Shown here: piece after piece, positions 3,867-49,320 of the stretch
Position numbering within the stretch: the stretch's first letter is position 1
Layout: every line of letters starts with the position of its first letter
NCBI RefSeq assembly: GCF_006345805.1
Contig: NC_043005.1
Coordinates: 59,272,001 to 59,336,000 of the forward strand
Direction of reading: 5' to 3'
Length of the DNA: 64,000 nucleotides
DNA from: Octopus sinensis
Taxonomy: Eukaryota
Translations under genes and position numbers: made by a program
Notes under the pieces: generated by a model
What the model was told of the DNA's origin: nothing
The model's input: the letters and a program-made list of their open reading frames with translations, nothing else
Database searches by the model: none

Positions 3867-4014
3867 GTGCTTATTTTATCGATCCCGAAAGGATGAAAGG
3901 AAAGGTCAACCTCGGCGGAGTTAGAACTCAGAACGGAGAAACGGATGGAACACCGCTAAGCATCTTGCCTGATGTGGTAACGATTCTGCCAGCGCTCCGC
4001 CCTAATAATAATAA

Positions 4015-4086
<72 letters not shown>

Positions 4087-4498
4087 TAATAATAACCCTT
4101 TCTGCTATAGGCACAAGTTCTGGAATTTTGTGGGAGGCGGATAGTCGATTTATCGACTCCTAGTGTTTCACTGGCACTTAATTTATAGTCCCCGAAAGAT
4201 TGAAAGGTAAAGTCGATCTCGGCTAAATTTAAATTTAAAACGTAAAGACAGACGAAACGCCAACTCGCCGCCTAAAGAATAATAATCTTTTCTATTATAG
4301 GCACAAGGCCTGAAATTTGGAGGAGATTTTTAAGTCGATTACATCGACGTCAGTACTAAACTGGTAGTTATTTGATCGACCGCGAAATGATGACAGATAA
4401 AGTTGACCTCCGTGGAATTTGAACCCAGAACGTAAAGACGGACGAAATGCCACTAAGTATTTTGTCCGGCGTGCTAAGGATTCTGCCAGCTCGCCTCC
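3867..4498 (-). mobile_element. Cluster of three tandem SINE family-A copies separated by (AAT)n
   Basis: Three reverse copies of GGCGGCGAGCTGGCAGAATCGTTAGC...GGTCGACTTTGCCTTTCATCCTTTCGGGGTCGATAAA... at 3867-4002, 4095-4272 and 4285-4498. Confidence 0.85.
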
Positions 4499-4522
4499 TA
4501 GATAATAATAATAATAATAATA

Positions 4523-4585: not shown

Positions 4586-4960
4586 GATAAATGGTATAAA
4601 CGTGCCAAACAATGTTCAAGATAACGACTAGGCCACAATCATCTGAGGCATACCTGTTCAAACCGACAAAGAAATAAAAGCTAATCTTCCAAACACAATA
4701 CTTAAGGATTGGAAAAAAAACCCTGCTTACTGTTAGACATTGCAGGGCCTTCTGACCAAAATGTTGCCCAAAAGGAAGTGGAGAAAATGTAAATGTTATA
4801 AAGACCTCGGAATTGAAGTATTCAAGATATGTATCATGAAGGTGAAAACAATACCAATAATAATTAGAGTACTGGGAATGATAAAAAAAAAACATATGAA
4901 CAAAAACGTAGAAGCTATACCTGGATCCTCAACAAACACTACACACTATCCAAAAACAAA
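4586..4960 (+). mobile_element. R4/Dong-like non-LTR retrotransposon 3' fragment (restriction-like endonuclease domain), decayed
   Basis: Pieces translate as KWYK..VPNNVQDND*ATII*GIPVQTDKEIKANLPNTILKD..TCLLLDIAGPSDQNVAQKEVEK..YKDLGIEV...IPIIIRVLG, matching the RLE pattern WD.PIQTD...NRPD..D...E.K..KY.DL. Lies between TAA/TGA repeats. Confidence 0.75.
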
Positions 4961-5340
4961 GATCTGTAAGGAACAGCCCACAACCTATGCGAGACACTAT
5001 CAGTTCAATAATGCACCGTAAACAAATCAATCCACAAAACAAGATTCTCTATACAGCAAATATCCAATGAAATAAACTACCACCAGCAAGCTAGATACCC
5101 AATACATTACACGCATAACTCACAATACAAACAGTAATACAACAAAAGACTGCACCACACCCCAAAAAACAAAAAACAAAAAAATCAAAAAGAAAAAAAA
5201 GAAACTGATCAATATAATACCAGGAAGAGTTTGCACACTTCCAACAACAAAAATGAACACACAATGCTGCACATAGTAGAAATTTGCCCGAAACTATCAA
5301 AGGTAGAACAATGATAATGATCATAATGCTAATAATAATA

Positions 5341-5373
<33 letters not shown>

Positions 5374-5799
5374 TATGCAAATTACAATATATGAATGTTT
5401 TGGTTCAGGAACTGATGTTATTTCGATATCATTAATGTAATTTTATCTGTATTTCTAAAATGCCACGCTCTTCCGGAGATGTAAATAGAATTGTTTCCCT
5501 CAGTTGGAAGTCTTAAACGTAAACAGCCTCTTTTGTATCCAGCGTTGTTGCTTCCTATTCGTTGTTATTGTTATTGTTAATAGTTGTTGATTGGTTGTCG
5601 TTACGAATGCCGAGTTTATTTTCAAATTTTCTGACGAAATATATATATTTTACACAACCATTTGTATTGAGGTCTTTGCTATAACAGTTTGTTAAAAAAA
5701 GGATAACAAAACAATAATTACATTTATATACAAGTTATGTAAAAAAAAAAAAAAGATTTAAAACAGTGCACCAACTATCTGAAGTTATGTGCTGGCAAA

Positions 5800-7410: not shown

Positions 7411-7830
7411 GGGCGGCGGGCTGGCAGAATCGTTAGCACATCGGGCGAAATGCTTAGCGGTACTTCGTCTGCCGTTACATTCTCAGTTCAAATTTCGCCG
7501 AGGCCGACTTTGACTTTAATCCTTTCGGGGTCGATTAAATAAATACCCGTTACGCACTGGGGTCGATGTAATCGACTTAATTCGTATGTCTGTTATTGTT
7601 TGTCCCCTCTGTGTTTAGCCCCTTGTGGGTGGTAAAAACATAGGTATTTCGTCTGCCGTTACATTCTGAGTTCAAATTTCGCCGAAGTCGACTTTGCCTT
7701 TAATCCTTTCGGGGTCGATTAAATAAGTACCCGTTACGCACTGGGGTCGATGTAATCGAATTAATCCCTTTGTCTGTCCTTGTTTGTTCCCTCTATGTTC
7801 ACTCCCTTCCCCTATTGGCAATAAAGAAAT
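7411..7830 (+). mobile_element. SINE family-A head-to-tail dimer
   Basis: Full copy 7411-~7645, then a second body restarting at GGTATTTCGTCTGCCGTTAC. Confidence 0.85.
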
Positions 7831-7981
7831 TAATATATTTTGTGTTTCTAACCTTTGTATGCCTATGTGAGATTTCATATTTCTCGACGAAAACCCCAGG
7901 AAAATTTGCCTATCATGATGTATTAACCTTTAGTATGACTCACAAACAGCTATTTTATACTGTTTCTGTTGCATGTAACGG

Positions 7982-10457: not shown

Positions 10458-10690
10458 CCAATGGCTCAGTGGTTAAGGCGTCGGGCTCACAAACATGAGA
10501 TTGTGAGCTCGATTCCTGGACCGGGCTGTGTGTTGTGTTCTTGACTAATTTTATTTCACGTTGCTCCAGTTCACTCAACTGTAGAGATGAGGTGCAACGT
10601 CACTGGTGTCAACCTGTATCGGCCTGTGCCTTTCCCTTGGATAGCATCGATGGCGTGGAGAGGGGAGGCTGGTATGCATGAGCGAACCAA
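10458..10690 (+). mobile_element. tRNA-derived SINE family B
   Basis: A box TGGCTCAGTGG, B box GCTCGATTCC, body TTTATTTCACGTTGCTCCAGTTCACTCA. Confidence 0.85.
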
Positions 10691-16394: not shown

Positions 16395-16625
16395 GGCGGC
16401 GAGCTGGCAGAACCGTTAGCACGCCGGGTGAAATGCTTAGCGGTATTTCGTCTGTCGTTACGTTCCGAGATCAAATTCCGCCGAGGTCGACTTTGCCTTT
16501 CATCCTTTCGGGGTCGATAAATTAAGTACCAGCTACGCACTGGGGTCGATGTAATCGACTTAATACCTATGTCTGTCCTTGTTCGTCCCCTCTGTGTTTA
16601 GCCCCTTGTGGGTAGTAAAGAAATA
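16395..16625 (+). mobile_element. Full-length SINE family A with 17-bp target-site duplication
   Basis: TATATTTATCAGTTGCA at 16376-16392 and 16626-16642. Confidence 0.95.
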
Positions 16626-16925
16626 TATATTTATCAGTTGCAGGGTTTTGTTGATTGAATAGATAAATGCTACTTTCTTATAGTGACCTTTTCATTGTTT
16701 CTGTCGTTATAGTGTATAGCATCTCAAATATTGGTTGGTTTGTTTATTTGTTCGAGTTCCTTCGCTGTTCTATGATGTGTTATTTCGTTTCAAAATATTT
16801 TTCAAATTCCAGAAATGATGTTTTGTACCTATGTTTACATGATGTGATCACCCCAGAGTGCATATTTATCCCGTCTTCCCTAAATGTGATTATTTTCATG
16901 GTTTCTTCTAGGCTTAGGTTTCTTT

Positions 16926-20254: not shown

Positions 20255-20874
20255 AGAACCCATTTCTAGTCACCAGTGACTATTCGATCCAAAAAGGTTC
20301 ATTTGTGAGACGTGACAGCAAAGAAGAGAACACATTCACTCTCTGCGCGTGATTAGACTCGGAACGTTTGTGAGGAACCCATTGACCCAATTTACTAACT
20401 TTTCCGATGGCATGCAGGTGTCAATGAATGGTTGAATGACCAAATCCAAGCTTTTCTGTTAGTTCCTCAACAGTTACGATGAAACTTTGTTTTGCAAAAC
20501 ATCCTCGTCGTGCTCTTCAAATCTTCTAAGATGAGGCTCATCTTTTAGGCTGTAGTTTCCGGGTGGGAATTTCTGGAACCACCGTTGGTACTGGCTAACG
20601 CTTATTGCCCGATTTCCATATACTGCACATATTCCTCGCACTCTCCATTGCGTTCTTGCCTTTATTGAACTCATGAAGCAAATTATGCTGAATATGCTCC
20701 TTTGTCACTTCCATTATAGCTTTGAGAAATTAACTGTTAAAATGGAACTGCACTCTTCAAAACTTGCAATAAGAATAAATATAAGGTAAAATTACTACCT
20801 GCTTTTATAGCAAGTTAATGCAGGTTGTTTATCCCGTCACCCTCCGACTCATGAAAATGAAAAAAATGCATTTT

Positions 20875-20930: not shown

Positions 20931-21384
<454 letters not shown>

Positions 21385-22424: not shown

Positions 22425-22560
22425 TCAATCGGTCGAATTTCCTCAAATGCTTATTTAATAAATTTCGATACTATAGGTTGATTGATCGAATTTCATAAGA
22501 CAAGCAATTGCCCGTATTTCATCAGACAGCTGATGGAATTTCATCAGCCCGACAGAATTT
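22425..22560 (+). repeat. Shorter, more decayed array of the same 26-bp unit (about 5 units)
   Basis: ggtcgaatttcctcaaatg, ttgatcgaatttcataagac, gacagctgatggaatttcatcag. Same orientation as 25081-25640. Confidence 0.7.
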
Positions 22561-22640
22561 TTATAGACTATAGAAGAGGACTTAGTATAGGTTACATACG
22601 ATAAGTTACAGTGTAGGTTATAGACTTAACTTACTAGCTA

Positions 22641-22806
22641 TGTAAATAGAGAATACTAACGAGTTCTCTATGGATACCGTATTTATTACGAGTGGTTTGT
22701 AAACGTATCTAACGAGCGAAAGCGAGTTAGATACGTTTACAAGCCACGAGTTGTAATAAATACGGTATCCATAGGGAATGAGTTGGGTATTTTATTTATT
22801 ACACAC
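22641..22806 (+). repeat. Long imperfect inverted repeat (hairpin) at the recombinase-element 3' end
   Basis: 22692-22713 pairs with 22726-22747 (21/22 plus one T.G). 22663-22689 pairs with 22750-22779 (two G.T, 3-nt bulge). Apex GCGAAAGC 22716-22723. Confidence 0.95.
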
Positions 22807-23134
22807 GAATAAACGACCATATTTTATTAATTTAATAATTAAATTCTTCACATCATGTTGAAGCGCGCATGAATACAGCTTGATTTCACGTCAGTGACGT
22901 CACAATGTGTAACTGTAAAAGGTGTCATGCCGCAGGAAGATAGTCCGACTTTATAACGCTAAGTTTTCAGGTGAAATGACTGATAACTGATGACTATTTA
23001 ACATTTTGTTAACATTCAAGTTCACGTTCAAGAAATACATAACACAGATTGAATCTTCAATAACTTTAATAATACTCAAACATGTTTTCGAGTAGCAATG
23101 TCAGTCAGAGTAGAGCACAATAGTCCAGGAAAAC

Positions 23135-24778
23135 TTAACAATCCTGATTATCTGTGAGACGAGGTCGCTTTGCATCTGAACCAAAGAAGTTCACATTGAT
23201 TGTTCCCCCATATATTGGAGCCGAGAAAATGGAGTGCAATGAACCAAAGCAAGTGACAGCGTTCCGAGATTGACTCGACGTAACGTTGACGGTGGAGGGG
23301 AGTTCACTTGCACTCATTGCTGCTGTGTGTGACGGAGGTACAAGCGAACCAGGCTGGTCGTTGTTGCTACTAAGGATGTTACTGATGGCACGATGACGAT
23401 CCATGGAAATATTGCTGTAACTATTGATGCTTTGCACATTACGATGTCCAGATATCTGCATGATTTCAGTTGGAGGAATGTTCTGGTCAGCGAGCTTCTG
23501 TACAAGGTATTTGCGTGCTGAATGGTTCGTGAATCTTCGATTGTCCAAACCAGCTGATTTAGCCATCCTTTTCATAATTGTACCTAGTTTGTTGACACCG
23601 ACCGGTTGACGTTTAAACCACGGATGAGAATGGGAGGCATCTTTGCAGTTGGTGGCCAAATAAAATGGTGAATCCGGCGATGAATAATCTGATGGTCTCA
23701 GATCAGCAAAACGCTTGTACAGGTTAACTGGACAACGCTCATCATTCGTCGCCCATGCTTTTGGGTAGATGTTACGTGCATGGTCGAGATTATCACCTTG
23801 ACAAGTTTTGGACTGTCGCTCCCTAAACTGAAGGAATTCCTTGCCTTCATTGTCAACATGCAAAGAAACGTCGCCCCATCACATGTCGTTGTGAGGTTTG
23901 ACACTCCGGATACCAAAGTGAACGGTGTTGTTCCACCATAGCGTGTTGAGGATGGATTCAGGTGTGTTCGGACCGAGCTGGTCACATTCCCATAGCTTGT
24001 TGATATCATCGTCGGAGAGAGATTCCGCGCGTTAAGGTAGGTTTCCCATTCCTTCACTTTTCAACAGCTTTTGCTTCATTTTTAGTACGTCATGTAGTTT
24101 CACGATGTCCCGTCCGAGAATAGTGACGTCGAGTAGTGTTTTGACTTCAGATATCTTTCAATACTGGATAACATTCCCCTCAAAGATGAAGGTTCATAGT
24201 TGCTACCGTTCGGCTTTCGTAACGAAATAAAGAAAGTACAGAGAATGTCACAAAGTTCGCTTTTTTTCGATAGATTCAATTGGACGCGTGTCGCCATTTG
24301 TCGCCATGAAAGCAAACAATCGTTTAACATCATAGTTTGTTTTCCGAAGAGTATTTTTATTTTGATTACCTTGAACGAATTTATCAATTCCAGAATGATC
24401 ATACCTCGGTTGAAATTCAAGATCATTATGGCTATCATCAAAGAAATCGCCACGAAGAAGATCATTGTACACCTCATCAGGGATGTTAAATGCAAGGTTC
24501 GATGACAATCCACTCGTCGATGACACTGTTTCAGGTACCTTTGTTAACCTGTATCCAGCAACATGTCGAATTTGGCCAGTATTTATCTTCACATTGAACA
24601 TTCTGTATGTTCCAAGAGGTTGAACAACGGATAATAATCTTCCCCCATCTTTACCATTAATCTTAACAAAATCATTCACCTTGATATCGATAACATTAAC
24701 TATCTTGTTGATAGATCTATCTGCACTGCAACAGTATCGACGAGCAGACGATATATGTTGTGATTTTTTTGGCAACAA
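23135..24778 (-). pseudogene. Tyrosine recombinase, Crypton/DUF3504 family (ZMYM/QRICH1/KCTD1-related domain), about 547 codons when repaired
   Basis: Hand reconstruction: ...IDKFVQGNQNKNTLRKTNYDVKRLF...[+1 fs in T7 run 24261-24267] ELCDILCTFFISLRKPNGSNYEPSSLRGMLSSIERYLKSKHY [-1 fs near 24110] VKLHDVLKMKQKLLKSEGMGNLP*RAESLSDDDINKLWECDQLGPNTPESILNTLWWNNTVHFGIRSVKPHNDM*WGD...RERQSKT...RCPVNLYKRF...PFYL...WFKRQPVGVNKLGTIMKRMAKSAGL...FTNHSARK...IMQISGHRNVQSINSY. Stops at 24032-24034 and 23879-23881. Catalytic R 23906-23908, H 23522-23524, R 23513-23515, H 23444-23446, Y 23417-23419. Confidence 0.92.
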
Positions 24779-25080
24779 AAAATTGAATTATGACCAGAAA
24801 TGTTTATATTTTATCTGTATATGACTTTAAGTGATATCTGGTATAAAAAAGATAGTATGTTTGTTTAATTACATGGCTACATTCTACCGGCTCGTGAAAG
24901 TTTAGTTGTAACTTATGAATGACAAAAGTAGTGCCGTCACCGTGACCTCGGGTCATCACCATGGATTGACCAATCAGAAGCAGCGCTCGCAGTATCTGAC
25001 ATATGTTAGATACCAAAAATATCTCAAAGTGTTCTCACTCACATGTGTGTAATAATCTATAATACAACCTAAAATGACGA

Positions 25081-25640
25081 GGACAGTTCTGCGAATTTTC
25101 TGAGCCTGACAGTTGAGATCGAACTTCATTGAACGGGCAACTGGTCGAATTTGATCCAATTTGATTCAGGGAGTTTCTCAGACGAGCAGTTGATCGAGGG
25201 TCAGTTGATCGAATCTTATTTGATGAACAGTTGATCAAATTTCATTAAATGAACAACCGATCGAAAATTTTAACTGGACAGTTTCTCGAATTTCACGTGA
25301 CAAAGTTGATCGACTTTCATAAGATGGGCAGTCGATCGAATTCCACCAAATGGACAGGTGATCGAATTTCATCGAACAGAGACAATTGATTGAATTTCAT
25401 ACAACAGACAGGGGCTCCAATATCATTAAAAGGGCAGTTGATCAAATTTGGTGAGACAAACAGTTGATCGAATTTCATCAGATGGACAATTGCTCGAATT
25501 CCTTTCAACTGACAGTTGATCCAACTTCATCTTTGGGCACATGATCAATTTCTGTCAAATTGACAGTTGATCGAATTTTAACAATCGGACGTTTGACCTA
25601 ATTTCAGCAAATGTGTGTTGGTCGAATTTAATGGGCTATG
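25081..25640 (+). repeat. Degenerate 26-bp minisatellite array, about 20 units, consensus GACAGTTGATCGAATTTCATCAAATG
   Basis: Units read directly, e.g. aacagttgatcgaatttcatcagatg, ggcagtcgatcgaattccaccaaatg, gacagttgatcgaattttaacaatcg. Confidence 0.9.
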
Positions 25641-31069: not shown

Positions 31070-32718
31070 GGGTCATCCTATAAATAATGCAGTTTTTACA
31101 ATTGCATGAACTCAAAGTCGGAGCGTGACGGGATAAGCTACGTGCATTAACTTGCTATAAAAGCAGGTAGTAATTCTACCTTGTATTTATTCTTAGTGCA
31201 AGTTTTGAAGAGTGCAGTTCGATTTTAACAGTTATTTTGCTAAGGTTACAATGGAAGTGGCAGAGGAGCATATTCGGCATGTTTTGTTTTATGAGTTCAA
31301 TAAAGGCAACAACGTAACGGAAAATGTGGGGAATATTAATGCAGTATATGGGGATCGGACAGTAAGCGCAAGCCAGTGTCAAACGTGGTTCCAGAAATTC
31401 CCACCCGAAAACTACAGCCTTGAAGACGAACCTCATGGAATATCGAGAACGTCCTGCAAACCCTTGTGGAACAAAATTTTATCTTAACCGTTGAAAATAC
31501 TAGCAGAGAAGCTTGGAATTGGTTATTCAACCATTTATCGACACCTACGTGCCATTGGAAAAGTCAGCAAATTGGGTCAATGTGTTCTTCACAAACTTTC
31601 CGAGTCTAGACACACGCAGAGAGTGAATGTGGGCCTCTTCTTTGCTGTCACGTCTCAGAAATGAAACATTTTTGGATCCAATTGTCACTGGTGAAATGGG
31701 TTCTCTATAAAAGTGTCAAGCGCTGAAGACAGTGAGTAGGGAGAGGAGAAACACCGGCACTGAAGTCTAAAGAAGGTCTTCATCTACGAGAGGTATTGTC
31801 ATGTGTTTGGTGGGATATGAAATGTTTATTCCACTTTGAACTTTTAAAGCCAAACCAAACGATAACAAAGGAGATCTACTGCGAGCAGCTTGAGCGACTT
31901 AAGCCAGCGCTTGAAGAAAAACAACCATCTTTGATTTCAAGACGAAAGGTGTTCTTCCATCAGGATAATGCTCAGCCAAATACAGCGAAGATGACATTCC
32001 AAAGGCTGGGGCAGTTTGACTGAGAAACGATGCCTCACCCACCATATTCACCGGACATTGTCCCATTTGATTATCATTTATTCAACAGTCTTCAAAATCA
32101 TTTGGACGGAAAAATATGAATTCTGTAGATGAGGTCAGAATAGTACTGGAGGAGTATTTTTCGTCACAGACAATTGAATTTTGGAAGTCTACCTGATAGA
32201 TGGAAGAGTATTGTAGAAAATGCAGGAGAGTATATCTTTATATATAAAAGTGAGCTTGTGTGCTATCTGTCTCCTACGATTTAGATTCCTAACTACTCCT
32301 ACATTTTGCGGTGCAGTTTAACCACAACCGGGTATCTTATAGTCGTGATTCATATCGAGCCCTTCTGGGTATTAGCGCGCGTTTACGATGAGTCTACGAT
32401 TAAAAAAAAAAATTACCATCAATTTTTCCCATTTTTAATGCATTTTTGGCATATATAAGGGAAGTAACTCTCTAAAAATTTATTATTAAATCTCAGAACG
32501 TAAAAAGCTACAGTAACACGCCCCCCCCTTTGTGGTTAGCCATATTGAGATGACTATTATACTTTACATCTCTAAGAATGCTTATATAGTTATTTCCCTT
32601 ACAAACCCGAGCAACGCCGGGCGATACTGCTAGTTTTAGATAAAAAAAAGAACTTCGTTTATCGTAATTTTAAAAAATAAAAGTTTATAAACCACGCATT
32701 ATTTATGGGATGACCCAA
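31070..32718 (+). mobile_element. Full-length decayed mariner (DD34D-type) with both TIRs, Helitron inserted
   Basis: Left GGGTCATCCTATAAATAATGC, right GCATTATTTATGGGATGACCCAA-TA. Transposase pieces MEVAEEHIRHVLFYEFNKG..., CVWWDMK...FFHQDNAQP, PHPPYSPDIVPFDYHLF. Confidence 0.92.
32235..32633 (+). mobile_element. Non-autonomous Helitron (399 bp) nested in a mariner
   Basis: TCTTTATATATAAAAG start after A32234. 3' 33 nt identical to 688-720. Removing it rejoins mariner GGAGAGTATA|TTTTAGAT (GEYILD). Confidence 0.9.
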
Positions 32719-35753: not shown

Positions 35754-35990
35754 GGTGGCGAGCTGGCAGAAACGTTAGCACGCCGGGCGAAATGCGTAGC
35801 CGTATTTCGTCTGCCGTTACGTTGTGAGTTCAAATTCCGCCGAGGTCGACTTTGCCTTTCATCCTTTCGGGGTCGATTAAATAAGTACCAGTTACGCACT
35901 GGGGTCGATGTAGTCGACTTAATCTGTGTGTCTGTCCTTGTTTGTCCCCTCTGTGTTTAGCCCCTTGTGGGTAGTAAAGAAATAGGTATT
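35754..35990 (+). mobile_element. Full-length SINE family A with 12-bp flanking direct repeat
   Basis: GGTATTTCCTTT at 35737-35748 and 35985-35996. Confidence 0.92.
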
Positions 35991-36769
35991 TCCTTTTCTT
36001 TAGTCGCTTATGATGGAAACAATGATAAAAAAGAGAATTTCTTTTACACACGCATACAATATAAATTTAATCACCAAACATTTTAATTAGCATAACGTAG
36101 TTGATGGTGGAAATAATAAAACCACAAAAAGGATTACTTAATTTATGAACGTCTTAAAATAATGAAGCTTAACTTTAATATTTGATGCTTTACATTATCG
36201 AAATAAAACAGACAATAAATAAATATCTGGTTATATTGTCCTAGAATCTATTTTAGTCTTCAGAGGTTCAATTATTAATTGTCTAAACGGATGGATTGAA
36301 AAACACTTCAAGCAATTGCTACTGAAGCTGGTTATGCAATAACTGCTTTTTGTCATGCTGTTGAAATCTTTATGAAACGATGGCTATTCTGATTATCTTC
36401 TCTGAGGGCAACCGTAAAACTTACGTAGAAGACAGGCAGATGAATGAATGTTTCACCATTTGTCGATGACGAACAGTAAAATAACTAAAGTAAATATTTG
36501 AATGTCGTTCGACATTACTAACGCAAGTAGATCACTGTCACTATCATAAAAAAAAATCAACTAAAGCTTAATTCAAGGCTAGTGGAATATGATATAATTT
36601 CTCTGAAATTATATTCAAGAAATATAATTTCTCCGAAAGACCTACGGACAGGCTTTCGCTTTGTTTAGAGTACAAGAATTTGGTGTTGTGAGATTGATAA
36701 AAACATCGGAAATTTTATTTGTTTGGTTCGATATTTTTCAAGAATTTCACTTCGACTGTGTGGATCTGA

Positions 36770-40485: not shown

Positions 40486-40748
40486 CATCTTTAAACTCCA
40501 TCCTGTCAACACCTCAAATATAAAATTCTCCAATGTCAAAGTCTCCCCCCGAAGACGGAGGCGGTGTTATCCAATAATAGATCCAAGTAACTATCATTAT
40601 TCCGGACCACCAATCTCCCAGAAATACCAGCTGGAGTCGTAAAACTTTACTTATTTAACTCCTGATATCATTTACGTTCCGTAAATCGGACTGTTTTATA
40701 TCCATACACATGTACAATTTTTTTTCCTATTAAATGTATTTAATTGTC

Positions 40749-41010
40749 TGCGTCTTGTGTTCTTGAGCAAGACACTTTATTTCACGTTGCTCCAGTTCAC
40801 TCAGCTGTAGAAATGAGTTGCGACGTCACAAGTGCCAAGCTGTATCGGCCCTTGCCTTTCCCTTGGACAACATCGGTGACGTGGAGAGGGGAGGCCGGTA
40901 TGCATGGGCGACTGCTGGTCTTCCATAAAACAACCTTGCCCAGACTTGTGCCTCAGAGGGTAACTCTCTAGGTGCAAACCCATGGTCAGTGTCTGACCGA
41001 AGGGGGTCAC
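40749..41010 (+). mobile_element. SINE family B 3' fragment
   Basis: CTTGAGCAAGACACTTTATTTCACG... to GTCTGACCGAAGGGGGTCAC. Matches the reverse of 20931-21180. Confidence 0.9.
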
Positions 41011-42049: not shown

Positions 42050-42989
42050 CGTTCAAATTCCGGCGAGGTCGACTTCCCTTTTCATCTTTTCGGGTCGATA
42101 AAATAAGTACCAGCTGAACTGTGGTCGATGTAATCAGCTCATCTTCACCTTTCTCAAGCTACCCTTGTGGTGAAACTTTGAAATAATAATAATAATATTA
42201 ATAATAATTGTTGTTATTATTGAATGACAGAGCAATGTATGTCATCAAAGTGACACCGGGTTACAAATATACGAAGCTCAATATATCCATTATGATTACC
42301 CGTTTGATAAGTGTACACCAGGTACATGCATCACAACCATATTTGCGCAATACCACGTCTCATATCGAGAAAATCATCAGTGCATGGTCATGTCGGTGGC
42401 CCCTAGTTGAAATTATCGTCACGTTGATTAGCCTATCCCACTCTAAAGGGCTTTGAATAAGGGTTTTTTAAGGATGTTGAATGAAACACTCATGTTTCCA
42501 GAGGTGAATTATTCGAACCCCAAAAAATTCCTCTCAAGATATTATTATAATGCGCCACTACTACTCCTGTTCGTCATCAGAGATACAAAAATCGTAAGCT
42601 AGTAATTGACATGCTCAATTGGCTAAAGTCAAGCAAGTGAGAAACAAACCTGTGATATTGAGCAGAATATTTGCTGTAGCCCATCTTTTATATCAAGGCA
42701 AGACATGTACATGATAACACTTCCAATCAGTTAAGATGAGAAGCCATGAGAGCCACAGTCTGGTACTGTATCAGGGGATTTTCATTGTTATTATTAAGGC
42801 GGCGAGCTGGCAGATGAAATGCTTAGTAGTATTTCGCCCGTCGCTACGTTCTGAGTTCGAATTCCACCGAGGTCGACTTTGCCTTTCATCCTTACAGGTG
42901 CGATAAATTAAGTACCAGTGACACTCCGGAGTCGATGTAATCGATTATTCCCCCGCCCGAAAATTTCAGGCCTTGTGACAAAATTTGAA

Positions 42990-48389: not shown

Positions 48390-49083
48390 CACACATACAT
48401 ACATACATACATACATACATACATACATACATACATACATACATACATACACATAATACGTACGTATATGTGTGTATATGCACGTGCGCTTGTATCCTTC
48501 TAGCATTGTATTGTAAAGAAAATAAAACAAGACATTTTCTATTAAAGAAAAAGAAAATCTTATAATTATAGATGTAGTTTTTTCTTTAGGGTGGGGGGCT
48601 TCCATCTTGATTATATTTCGGTATTAATGTTTGTTTCTTTAAAATAATTTCTGTTCTATAGCTTAGATGAAGAATTAAAAAAATATATTTTTCTATATAT
48701 CTAATTATTTTTGTTCTCGATATTTATTTGCGTTATTCACAGATTTTATTATTTCCCTCATGGCATCATTGAAATGTGGACAATATTTCATTTAGAAGTG
48801 TAATTTTGCTAGCTATGGTCGTTTTTTTTCTTTCTATGACTTGCATTATCTCTTTAAAAAATATATTTATATATTATTTTCCTAAGCATCCGTGATTTAG
48901 TGGCAATGCTTTATCTTTTAATCTAAATGGAAGATTTAATGATAAACTTATTACTAAACAAAGTCTGAGATAATGAAATGAAAAACAAAATTGTATGAAG
49001 CTTTTCTCATGGCTTAGTAGAGCCGCTAAGTTGATAATGTGTTAGGCTCCTGACTGATAATGCAATGACTCATATTTTCATTT

Positions 49084-49320
49084 ATTTCTTTATTGCCCAC
49101 AAGGGGCTAAACATAGAGGGGACAAACAAGGACAGACAAAGGGATTAAGTCGATTACATAGACCCCAGTGCGTAACTGGTACTTAATTTATCGATCCCGA
49201 AAGGATGAAAGGCAAAGTCGACCTCGGCAGAAATTGAACTCAGAACGTAACGACATACGAAATACCTATTTCTTTACTACCCACAAGGGGCTAAACACAG
49301 CGAACAAACAAGGACAGACA
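49084..49320 (-). mobile_element. SINE family-A tandem-unit fragment
   Basis: Reverse body with junction ACGAAATACCTATTTCTTTACTACCCACAAGGGGCTAAAC. Confidence 0.85.

What the first reader, a model, noticed from the sequence alone, without database searches (positions are those of the whole stretch)
24992..25055. Both ends share paired GTATCTAAC/GTTAGATAC boxes: candidate recombinase sites
Seen: the 5' end has GTATCTGAC-ATAT-GTTAGATAC (24992-25013). The 3' hairpin has GTATCTAAC-GAGCGAAAGCGA-GTTAGATAC (22705-22734). The inverted 9-mers are the same, with a 4-nt versus 12-nt spacer. GTGTGTAATAA (25045-25055) is the exact reverse complement of TTATTACACAC (22796-22806) at the hairpin foot and an imperfect direct repeat of the outer arm. 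Established: YR sites are two inverted binding elements around a spacer. Inference: these define the attL/attR-like core or accessory arm sites. The far end could swap pairing with the outer hairpin arm during excision.
Basis: partly seen in the sequence, partly recalled or inferred. Interest (0 to 1): 0.72.

Follow-up and report, generated by a model that had tools for sequence, protein, structure and literature searches.

The report
Terminal palindrome of an animal Crypton transposon
The repeats are real and mark the two ends of a decayed 2.4-kb Crypton transposon, showing that this group, described as having no terminal repeats, has a conserved end structure: a long hairpin-forming palindrome whose outer stem is split between the two ends.

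Summary
All three sequence observations are exact. They lie in a decayed CryptonA-type tyrosine-recombinase (YR) DNA transposon, window 22646-25055, gene on the minus strand, in a microsatellite-rich, probably molluscan genome.

The 11-mer at 25045-25055 is the element's 5' terminus. Its inverted copy at 22796-22806 abuts a ~150-nt imperfect palindrome that ends at the 3' terminus (22646). With the two termini side by side, as in the circular form assumed for Cryptons, the outer stem of the palindrome is completed.

This layout recurs in relatives with 37-55% protein identity, including Littorina and Saccostrea. A palindrome lies downstream of the gene in 20 of 36 metagenome loci. In seven loci the 5' terminus matches the palindrome flank over 17-30 nt.

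The 9-mer boxes are family-specific and lie inside both ends, so they cannot be crossover cores. They are best read as accessory binding sites; their conservation is only partial.

The palindrome is strand-asymmetric: ACTCG occurs at mirrored positions on one strand, and most mismatches would be G.A pairs on the antisense strand.

The layout resembles the internal complementary region of DIRS1 retrotransposons. I found no published description of it for animal Cryptons.

The parts
22646..25055 (-). Whole element: decayed CryptonA-type tyrosine-recombinase DNA transposon, 2,410 bp. The ends are uncertain by about 3-5 nt because short AT-rich bases are shared with the flanks.
   Evidence: The 5' terminus follows from homology with L001/L003, whose mutual similarity (95%) starts at the homologous 12-mer. 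The 3' terminus follows from L002, where flanking satellite resumes right after the homologous 11-mer. The same 11-mer ends the palindrome in 12 other loci. There is no second copy in the window.
25045..25055 (-). 5' terminal 11-mer (TTATTACACAC in gene orientation).
   Evidence: The homologous terminus is TTTCTTACACAC in L001/L003 and TTATCCTTCAT in Littorina L005.
25014..25044 (-). 5' subterminal block between the terminus and the box pair.
   Evidence: It aligns with L001, L003 and L005; GAGA is invariant in all five rows.
24992..25013 (.). 5' box pair: GTATCTGAC-ATAT-GTTAGATAC on the + strand. Candidate accessory binding site.
   Evidence: I20; 11 of 200,000 shuffles. A homologous pair with the same ATAT spacer sits at the same offset in L001/L003.
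24970..24974 (+). CCAAT box (ATTGG on the gene strand), 18 nt gene-ward of the box pair. Presumed promoter element (inference).
   Evidence: Read. CCAAT boxes sit at comparable places in L002, L006, L027, L046, L079 and L059.
23135..24778 (-). Tyrosine recombinase gene remnant (QRICH1-like N-terminal domain, DUF3504, Phage_integrase). It is broken: read in one frame it has 6 stops; about 50 codons read in another frame (2 frameshifts), which leaves 2 nonsense codons. No ATG start is evident.
   Evidence: The catalytic R, K, H, R, H, Y columns are still occupied.
22796..22806 (.). Inverted copy of the 5' terminus, abutting the gene-proximal foot of the palindrome (ICR-like segment). It overlaps an AATAAA on the gene strand.
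22646..22795 (.). Imperfect palindrome of about 150 nt (hairpin or cruciform former) that ends at the 3' terminus.
   Evidence: Compensatory changes occur in 24 of 47 pairs and 25 of 30 pairs. Homologous palindromes are found in L002-L006, L087 and 20 of 36 metagenome loci.
22705..22734 (.). Apex of the palindrome: 9-mer box pair around a 12-nt loop. The loop carries GCGAAAGC on the + (antisense) strand.
   Evidence: The boxes are exact in L002, one half remains in L004, and they are diverged in L003 and L005. The loop is conserved in L002 and L005.
22646..22656 (-). 3' terminal 11-mer (GTATTCTCTAT in gene orientation).
   Evidence: identical in L002, L005 and L077, one change in 7 loci, two changes in 2. 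L003 has one change.
22426..22560 (.). Neighbour: degenerate copies of a 26-bp satellite on the 3' side of the element. An 85-nt unique stretch (22561-22645) lies between the satellite and the element.
   Evidence: (D18).
25078..25610 (.). Neighbour: 26-bp satellite array on the 5' side. 22 nt (25056-25077) lie between the element and the array.
   Evidence: (D18).

Best explanation
The finding sits at the 5' end of a dead CryptonA-type transposon (22646-25055, gene on the minus strand). The three repeats are parts of one conserved end architecture.

Shown:
(a) The 11-mer is the 5' terminus.
(b) An inverted copy of it lies directly next to a ~150-nt palindrome downstream of the recombinase gene.
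(c) The palindrome ends at the 3' terminus.
(d) Read together, the 3' and 5' termini are therefore the complement of the gene-proximal arm plus its flank.
(e) This holds in relatives from gastropod, bivalve and marine metagenome contigs.

Inferred:
- In the circular form that the accepted Crypton model postulates, the two termini abut and complete a palindrome of about 170 nt.
- The recombinase crosses over inside one arm of that palindrome, at an asymmetric spot next to a short AT-rich stretch. That stretch reads TAA on the window + strand. It is present both in the left flank (22643-22645) and at the right end of the element (25053-25055).
- The 9-mer box pairs (43 nt inside the 5' end, and at the palindrome tip) are family-specific accessory sites. 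The recombinase or one of its N-terminal domains would bind them on either side of the junction. They are not the crossover core.
- Because the 5' pair lies just upstream of a CCAAT box, it could also couple binding to transcription of the gene.
For: Element identity: DUF3504, Phage_integrase and QRICH1-like domains; 58 relatives, best 53% identity, in molluscs.

Termini:
- L001/L003 similarity starts at the homologous 12-mer.
- L002 satellite resumes after the homologous 3' 11-mer.
- The 3' 11-mer is kept with 0-2 changes in 12 loci.

Palindrome as a clade feature:
- Present downstream of the gene in L002-L006 and L087.
- Present in 20 of 36 metagenome loci, against 4 of 30 in equal-sized upstream controls.
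- Compensatory pairs: 24 of 47 and 25 of 30.
- Other palindromes in the same loci lack the hallmark motifs.

Complementarity of the termini to the palindrome flank:
- 17-30 nt in L006, L027, L046, L079, L059, L023 and L036, always 783-833 nt upstream of the C-terminal domain. For the five loci tested by shuffling, 0 of 100 shuffles reached the observed match.
- 15 nt in Saccostrea; 10 of 11 in Littorina; 11 of 11 in the window.

Boxes:
- 11 of 200,000 shuffles.
- Exact in the L002 apex.
- In L001/L003 the 5' pair has the same ATAT spacer, and its half-site is 8 of 9 identical to L003's own apex box.
Against: - No second copy from the same genome and no empty site were available, so the ends are inferred from relatives and remain uncertain by 3-5 nt.
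- Seven loci that have a palindrome showed no detectable match to a 5' terminus (L015, L026, L061, L076, L012, L021, L080).
- The 5' box pair is absent from L002, whose 5' end is rearranged.
- Sharing of a half-site between the 5' palindrome and the hairpin is weak or absent in distant relatives.
- A 3-nt shared TAA has no statistical weight.
- Nothing here shows protein binding or a circular form. Both are taken from the published Crypton model (PMC3212892).
Confidence: 0.6

Rival explanations
1. The palindrome works as a folded single strand (a hairpin of the antisense strand, or a cruciform), not as ordinary duplex DNA. The recombinase would recognise a structured, strand-specific substrate, as integron integrases do with attC. 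Alternatively, the ends would fold back on the complementary segment, as proposed for DIRS1 single-stranded intermediates. This concerns the physical form of the site and is compatible with the end architecture described above.
For: - ACTCG occurs 65 times on the sense strand of 29 palindromes against 12 CGAGT (p = 6e-10; 22 loci against 3).
- The ACTCG motifs sit at mirrored offsets of about -34, -9, +8 and +33 from the centre.
- Arm mismatches are pyrimidine-pyrimidine on the sense strand 201 times against 40 purine-purine. On the antisense strand these are therefore mostly G.A pairs.
- The antisense hairpin is predicted more stable in 21 of 21 loci with RNA parameters and 18 of 21 with DNA parameters.
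- The window loop reads GCGAAAGC on the antisense strand.
- The 5' box pair also has G.T on the antisense strand where the sense strand has A.C.
Against: - Direct repeats of ACTCG embedded in a duplex palindrome could equally be oriented protein-binding sites.
- No single-stranded stage is known for Cryptons.
- Three loci have the opposite polarity (L079, L023, L021). L079's apex is simply flipped relative to its relative L046.
Confidence: 0.25
2. The 5' box pair is a promoter or operator element for a host factor or for autoregulation. Its likeness to the hairpin tip reflects shared ancestry or a shared binding protein, with no direct role in recombination.
For: - The pair lies 18 nt upstream of a CCAAT box.
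- Distant relatives have other small palindromes (of the TTTCAC..GTGAAA type, one with a CACGTG centre) next to CCAAT boxes in the same region.
- L002 keeps the apex boxes but has no 5' pair.
Against: - The same 9-mer is used twice in inverted order at both places (11 of 200,000 shuffles).
- The half-site changes in step at both places in L001/L003.
- The hairpin tip lies downstream of the gene and is not in a promoter.
Confidence: 0.2
3. One reading: each box pair is a recombination core (two inverted binding elements around a spacer), and crossover takes place in the ATAT or 12-nt spacer.
For: The form fits the textbook core site (inverted 9-mers around a short spacer).
Against: - After integration a core would be split between element and host. 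Here both pairs are complete and internal.
- Conserved element sequence runs 43 nt (5') and about 60-75 nt (3') beyond them.
- The flanks diverge only beyond the 11-mers.
Confidence: 0.04
4. The palindrome acts at the RNA level, as a 3' UTR hairpin, a terminator, or a source of small RNAs. The terminal complementarity would then be incidental.
For: - It lies 330-530 nt downstream of the stop codon in all relatives.
- It gives a weak, sub-threshold miRNA-precursor-like hit (26 bits against a gathering score of 44).
- With RNA parameters there is a strong strand bias.
Against: - The more stable strand is antisense to the gene.
- An AATAAA sits in the gene-proximal foot, so the mRNA probably ends before or within the first arm.
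- The complementary partner of the flank is the 5' terminus, upstream of the CCAAT box, and is unlikely to be transcribed.
- No Rfam family reaches threshold.
Confidence: 0.08

Closest known systems
CryptonA (animal Crypton) DNA transposons, Kojima and Jurka 2011 (PMC3212892)
   Same: A single gene for a tyrosine recombinase with a DUF3504-type domain, no other enzyme, about 2.4 kb, no terminal inverted or long direct repeats, and relatives in molluscs and other invertebrates.
   Different: [quoted passage not shown] A 2026 study of fungal CryptonA elements also found no detectable repeats (PMC13465315). Here the clade has a defined end structure: a 3'-terminal palindrome plus an inverted copy of the 5' terminus.
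DIRS1-like retrotransposons: termini and internal complementary regions (PMC3266345)
   Same: - A segment near the 3' end is complementary to the start of the element and, next to it, to the end of the element, so that the joined ends are mirrored internally.
- The junction is AT-rich and about 3 bp long.
- There is no target-site duplication.
- The enzyme is a tyrosine recombinase.
   Different: - No reverse transcriptase, RNase H or methyltransferase, and no inverted terminal repeats.
- The segment complementary to the 3' end and the 3' end itself form one compact hairpin, instead of an ICR plus a long ITR.
- The element is 2.4 kb against 4-6 kb.
Fungal and oomycete Cryptons (CryptonF/S) and the Goodwin circle model (as summarised in PMC3212892)
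   Same: Short bases shared between the element ends and the flanks (here TAA, and TTAT or TTTAT in several relatives). This is consistent with recombination between a circle junction and a target that shares microhomology.
   Different: Those families show 4-6-bp terminal direct repeats and no reported palindrome. Here the shared bases are shorter and less certain, and the junction lies inside a long palindrome.
Folded single-stranded substrates of bacterial tyrosine recombinases (integron attC; CTX phage attP). From my own knowledge, not tested here.
   Same: An imperfect palindrome whose conserved mismatches are strand-specific, with short paired boxes near the ends of the stem.
   Different: The host is eukaryotic, the recombinase family is unrelated at the sequence level, the palindrome is about twice as long, and there is no evidence for a single-stranded stage.
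Arm-type or accessory sites of lambda-like integrases, and the inverted repeats of the yeast 2-micron plasmid. From my own knowledge.
   Same: Binding sites lie away from the crossover point on both sides of it. The flip of the segment between inverted arms (L079 against L046) resembles FLP-type inversion.
   Different: No binding data exist. The flip could equally arise by replication template switching or by any recombination between the arms.

Membership tests
Crypton (CryptonA) DNA transposon | Encodes a tyrosine recombinase with the catalytic R..H-x-x-R..Y set and a DUF3504-type domain. | tested here: met
   Pfam DUF3504 at 1.1e-11 and Phage_integrase at 2.4e-9. The invariant R, K, H, R, H, Y columns are occupied in the window copy. 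The gene is nevertheless broken.
Crypton (CryptonA) DNA transposon | No reverse transcriptase or other transposition enzyme inside the element. | tested here: met
   Between 22646 and 25055 the only coding remnant is the recombinase.
Crypton (CryptonA) DNA transposon | No terminal inverted repeats and no long direct repeats. | tested here: met
   The two termini are not complementary to each other. The only long repeat is the internal palindrome at one end.
Crypton (CryptonA) DNA transposon | Short direct repeats or microhomology at the two junctions. | tested here: inconclusive
   TAA at 22643-22645 and 25053-25055. TTAT or TTTAT is present at both junctions in L005, L023 and L027. These are too short to be significant, and no empty site was available.
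Crypton (CryptonA) DNA transposon | Repeated, dispersed copies in the host genome. | tested here: not met
   There is only one copy in the 64-kb window, and the source genome could not be searched. Multiple related copies exist in assembly ERZ25071447 (L001-L004).
DIRS1-like retrotransposon | Reverse transcriptase, RNase H and methyltransferase ORFs. | tested here: not met
   No such domains in the element.
DIRS1-like retrotransposon | Inverted terminal repeats. | tested here: not met
   The 5' and 3' termini are not inverted copies of each other.
DIRS1-like retrotransposon | An internal region complementary to the start and to the end of the element, adjacent to each other. | tested here: met
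   22796-22806 complements the 5' terminus. The adjoining arm 22785-22795 and inward complements the 3' terminus. The same holds in 7 strong and 4 weaker relatives.
attC-like folded recombination site | An imperfect palindrome with conserved strand-specific unpaired or mismatched bases. | tested here: met
attC-like folded recombination site | Recombination of one folded strand by the recombinase. | not testable with these tools
   No tool here addresses the physical form of the substrate.

The most novel reading that the evidence does not exclude
Animal CryptonA transposons carry a DIRS-type internal complementary segment fused to a strand-specific, hairpin-forming 3' end, and their recombinase acts on this folded or cruciform site. 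On this reading the unusual 'ends mirrored inside' logic of DIRS retrotransposons was inherited from RT-less Crypton ancestors rather than invented for reverse transcription. The DNA site once recognised by the ancestors of the domesticated DUF3504 genes (ZMYM2-4, QRICH1, KCTD1) would then become identifiable.
Probability: 0.3. Interest if true: 0.8.

Novelty: new variant of a known kind. Interest (0 to 1): 0.62.

Why it matters
Cryptons are the least understood class of eukaryotic DNA transposons. For the animal lineages the literature held here reports no terminal repeats at all, so their ends and recombination sites are essentially undefined and copies are hard to annotate.

A conserved, recognisable end architecture would do several things:
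- It would let genome annotators delimit these elements and find gene-less derivatives. The architecture is a 3' palindrome with a conserved terminal 11-mer, mirrored ACTCG motifs, and an inverted copy of the 5' terminus.
- It gives a concrete model of where the recombinase crosses over.
- It offers a structural link between Cryptons and DIRS retrotransposons, which are thought to descend from a Crypton-like ancestor.

The window copy itself is dead and of no functional consequence.

Tried and rejected
- Searched the window for other copies: none.
- Single-motif enrichment in the window: none.
- Rfam and tRNA scans: nothing at threshold.
- L002 was examined as a possible clean insertion in a ~510-bp satellite. 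Its 3' boundary is sharp. Its 5' part is rearranged: two insertions of an unrelated inverted-repeat element, a duplicated internal segment, and flanks that cover the same part of the satellite unit. It therefore gives no empty site.
- The 5' end of L004 could not be found. Its upstream DNA is a different repeat.
- L088 (Ylistrum) has no palindrome and its gene model does not translate to the query, so it may be domesticated or decayed.
- An automated test for sharing of half-sites between 5' palindromes and hairpins across families gave weak results: L036 4 of 300, L006 23 of 300, others not significant. It also chose a poor register for the window. The general claim that boxes are shared at both ends is therefore not made beyond the window family and L001/L003.
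- Considered that the hairpin is an unrelated foldback insertion. Rejected because of its fixed distance from the gene, the hallmark motifs and the terminal complementarity.
- Considered mutational bias as the cause of the strand asymmetry. Deamination of the non-transcribed strand would favour the opposite polarity, and it cannot place ACTCG at mirrored positions.

Full report
**1. Observation.** The three sequence statements are exact.
- 24992-25013 reads GTATCTGAC-ATAT-GTTAGATAC.
- 22705-22734 reads GTATCTAAC-GAGCGAAAGCGA-GTTAGATAC.
- 25045-25055 (GTGTGTAATAA) is the reverse complement of 22796-22806.

The second pair sits at the tip of a long imperfect palindrome (self-match 22664-22778, 83% over 118 nt). 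Neither the 9-mer nor the 11-mer is enriched in the window as a whole. An inverted pair of the apex 9-mer in the 170 nt inside the 5' end arose in only 11 of 200,000 shuffles. The 11-mer match alone is not significant in the window. Its weight comes from relatives.

**2. What the element is.** The window is AT-rich (about 35% GC), full of microsatellites and dispersed repeats, and has no long ORFs, so it is a eukaryotic genome. On the minus strand between 24778 and 23135 lies the remnant of one gene. Its pieces match Pfam DUF3504 (1.1e-11), Phage_integrase (2.4e-9) and the QRICH1 domain (just below the cut-off). This is the domain set of animal Cryptons, DNA transposons that encode only a tyrosine recombinase (PMC3212892).

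The best protein relatives are molluscan (Littorina saxatilis 53% identity, then Saccostrea, Ylistrum and Mytilus). The gene is dead. Read in one frame against the Littorina protein it carries 6 stops. About 50 codons read in another frame (two frameshifts), which leaves two nonsense codons, and no ATG start is evident. The catalytic columns are still occupied. There is no second copy in the window. Degenerate copies of a 26-bp satellite lie on both sides.

**3. The ends, from relatives.** One ENA assembly (ERZ25071447) holds DNA-level relatives at 65-76% identity (L001-L004).
- L001 and L003 are 95% identical, and their similarity starts at TTTCTTACACAC. This aligns with the window's TTATTACACAC, the gene-strand reading of 25045-25055.
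- In L002 the flanking ~510-bp satellite resumes directly after GTATTCTCTAT, at the outer foot of the homologous palindrome.
- The window has the identical 11-mer at 22646-22656 (gene strand). It is also identical in L005 and L077. It has one change in seven loci and two changes in two, and one change in L003.

The element is therefore 22646-25055 (2,410 bp), give or take a few bases.

**4. The palindrome is a feature of the clade.**
- Every relative I fetched with enough downstream DNA has a 115-190-nt palindrome 200-530 nt after the stop codon: L002, L003 (shortened), L004, L005 (Littorina), L006 and L087 (Saccostrea).
- A metagenome scan with a protein alignment gave 80 further loci. Of 36 loci with at least 900 nt downstream of the catalytic region, 20 have such a palindrome starting 210-830 nt further on. 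Only 4 of 30 have one in an equal stretch upstream.
- Sequence diverges while pairing is kept. 24 of 47 pairs show compensatory changes among five close relatives, and 25 of 30 among 18 loci.
- Other palindromes in the same loci lack the hallmark motifs.

**5. The ends are mirrored inside the element.** In the window, the inverted copy of the 5' terminus (22796-22806) directly abuts the gene-proximal foot of the palindrome. The adjoining arm is the complement of the 3' terminus. The same relation holds elsewhere.
- The reverse complement of the palindrome's gene-proximal flank matches a site upstream of the gene over 17-30 nt in L006, L027, L046, L079, L059, L023 and L036. The match is always 783-833 nt upstream of the start of the C-terminal domain. 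For the five loci tested by shuffling, 0 of 100 shuffles reached it.
- The match is 15 nt in Saccostrea and 10 of 11 in Littorina. It is weaker in L008 and L016.
- L002's flank (GTGTGTAAGAAA) is the exact complement of the L001/L003 terminus.
- Seven loci with a palindrome gave no match.

When the 3' and 5' termini are read one after the other they continue the distal arm, and the palindrome becomes about 22 bp longer in the window and up to 60 bp longer in relatives. The breakpoint coincides with a small asymmetry between the arms (window: CTCTAT against TTAT). It lies next to a short AT-rich stretch that in several loci occurs on both sides of the insertion: TTAT or TTTAT in L005, L023 and L027. 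In the window this is TAA, at 22643-22645 and 25053-25055. These short repeats carry no statistical weight on their own.

**6. The 9-mer boxes.** Both pairs are internal: 43 nt inside the 5' terminus, and about 60-75 nt inside the 3' terminus. They cannot be the crossover core of integration, because conserved element sequence continues beyond them.

For a shared function:
- The pair statistics in the window.
- Exact conservation of both apex boxes in L002, and of one in L004.
- In L001/L003 a homologous 5' pair lies at the same offset with the same ATAT spacer. Its half-site (GTATACAAC) is 8 of 9 identical to L003's own apex box (GTATCCAAC). The boxes therefore change together.

Against:
- L002 has no 5' pair, although its 5' part is rearranged.
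- Littorina has other sequences at both places.
- In distant relatives the 5' region carries different small palindromes next to CCAAT boxes, and their likeness to the hairpin is weak.

I read the boxes as family-specific accessory sites, possibly doubling as an operator. The window pair lies 18 nt upstream of a CCAAT box.

**7. Strand asymmetry (unexpected).** For a palindrome, the two strands are remarkably different.
- ACTCG occurs 65 times on the gene strand of 29 palindromes against 12 CGAGT (p = 6e-10).
- The ACTCG motifs sit at mirrored offsets of about -34, -9, +8 and +33 from the centre in most loci. The arms therefore face each other with T.C/C.T mismatches there.
- Over all arms, mismatches are pyrimidine-pyrimidine on the gene strand 201 times against 40 purine-purine. 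On the antisense strand they are thus mostly G.A pairs.
- The antisense hairpin is predicted to be more stable in 21 of 21 loci (RNA parameters) and 18 of 21 (DNA parameters).
- The window loop reads GCGAAAGC on the antisense strand. From my own knowledge this is a very stable DNA mini-hairpin motif.
- Three loci have the opposite polarity. In L079 the apex is simply flipped relative to its relative L046.

This points to either oriented binding sites inside a duplex palindrome or a folded antisense strand as the working form. I cannot decide between them.

**8. Mechanism.** The published model for Cryptons is excision as a circle and integration by recombination between the circle junction and a target that shares a few bases (PMC3212892, PMC13465315). 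Placed in that model, the data say the following.
- The junction lies inside one arm of a long palindrome.
- The conserved 3' 11-mer and the 5' terminus are the two half-sites at the crossover.
- The box pairs flank the junction at about 45 and 60-75 nt.

Shown: the anatomy and its conservation. Inferred: the circle, the crossover position, and binding by the recombinase.

**9. Comparison with known systems.**
- By gene content the element is a CryptonA member (see the membership table).
- Its end layout is closest to DIRS1-like retrotransposons. Their internal complementary regions are complementary to the start and the end of the element and overlap on a 3-bp AT-rich 'circular junction' (PMC3266345). 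The element lacks reverse transcriptase and inverted terminal repeats, so it is not a DIRS element.
- The strand-specific imperfect palindrome resembles folded attC or CTX sites of bacterial recombinases (my own knowledge, untested).

**10. Novelty and limits.** In the paper library searched, animal Cryptons are described as having no terminal repeats. A 2026 study of CryptonA elements found none with many repeat finders. No paper linked Cryptons with a palindrome or hairpin. Repbase entries and subscription papers could not be checked.

The conclusions rest on one dead copy plus relatives of 37-76% identity. The source genome itself could not be searched.

Noticed in passing
window 22426-22548 and 25078-25610: A 26-bp satellite (TRF unit CAGTTGATCGAATTTCATTAAATGGA, 14.6 copies on the right) lies on both sides of the element. 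The transposon therefore seems to sit in or beside a satellite array. In L002 the relative also sits in a satellite, of about 510 bp.
   Followed up: partly
window 7412-7833, 16395-16632, 35754-35991, 42815-42944; inverted at 49080-49300, 4330-4505 and 3867-4022: A dispersed repeat family of about 240 nt (85-92% identity between copies), probably a SINE or MITE. ARAGORN finds no tRNA and Rfam finds nothing.
   Followed up: no
window 20331-20849 and 31116-31631: Two inverted repeat segments (221 nt at 87% and 133 nt at 87%) bracket a ~10-kb region that contains the Crypton. They are probably two copies of another repeat in opposite orientation.
   Followed up: no
window 21009-21190, 40748-40929, 10550-10685: Another repeat family (93% and 89% complementary pairs).
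   Followed up: no
L002 4682-5040 and 5458-5812: Two inverted copies (88% identity) of an unrelated ~360-bp element with G/C-homopolymer-rich ends. The second copy interrupts the N-terminal coding part of the Crypton relative, and the first lies just upstream. In addition, 5108-5206 duplicates the internal coding segment 5985-6084 (91%).
   Followed up: partly
L079 about 5400-5460, compared with L046 about 4955-5010: The central ~30 nt of the palindrome is inverted between two members of one family (a flip of the apex).
   Followed up: partly
L006 6338-6605: Two further, unrelated near-perfect palindromes follow directly after the Crypton palindrome. They lack the ACTCG and terminal motifs.
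   Followed up: partly
window about 24560-24700 (minus strand); L001 about 2860-2960; L002 5343-5457: A short conserved N-terminal segment of the recombinase (about 45 residues, containing ...PLGTY...) has no Pfam match. It could be a small DNA- or chromatin-binding domain.
   Followed up: no
window 22584-22625: A 26-nt-spaced direct repeat (AGTATAGGTTACATAC / AGTGTAGGTTATAGAC) lies in the 85-nt stretch between the satellite and the 3' terminus. It is weakly similar, in inverted order, to the 22 nt beyond the 5' terminus. Its meaning is unknown.
   Followed up: no
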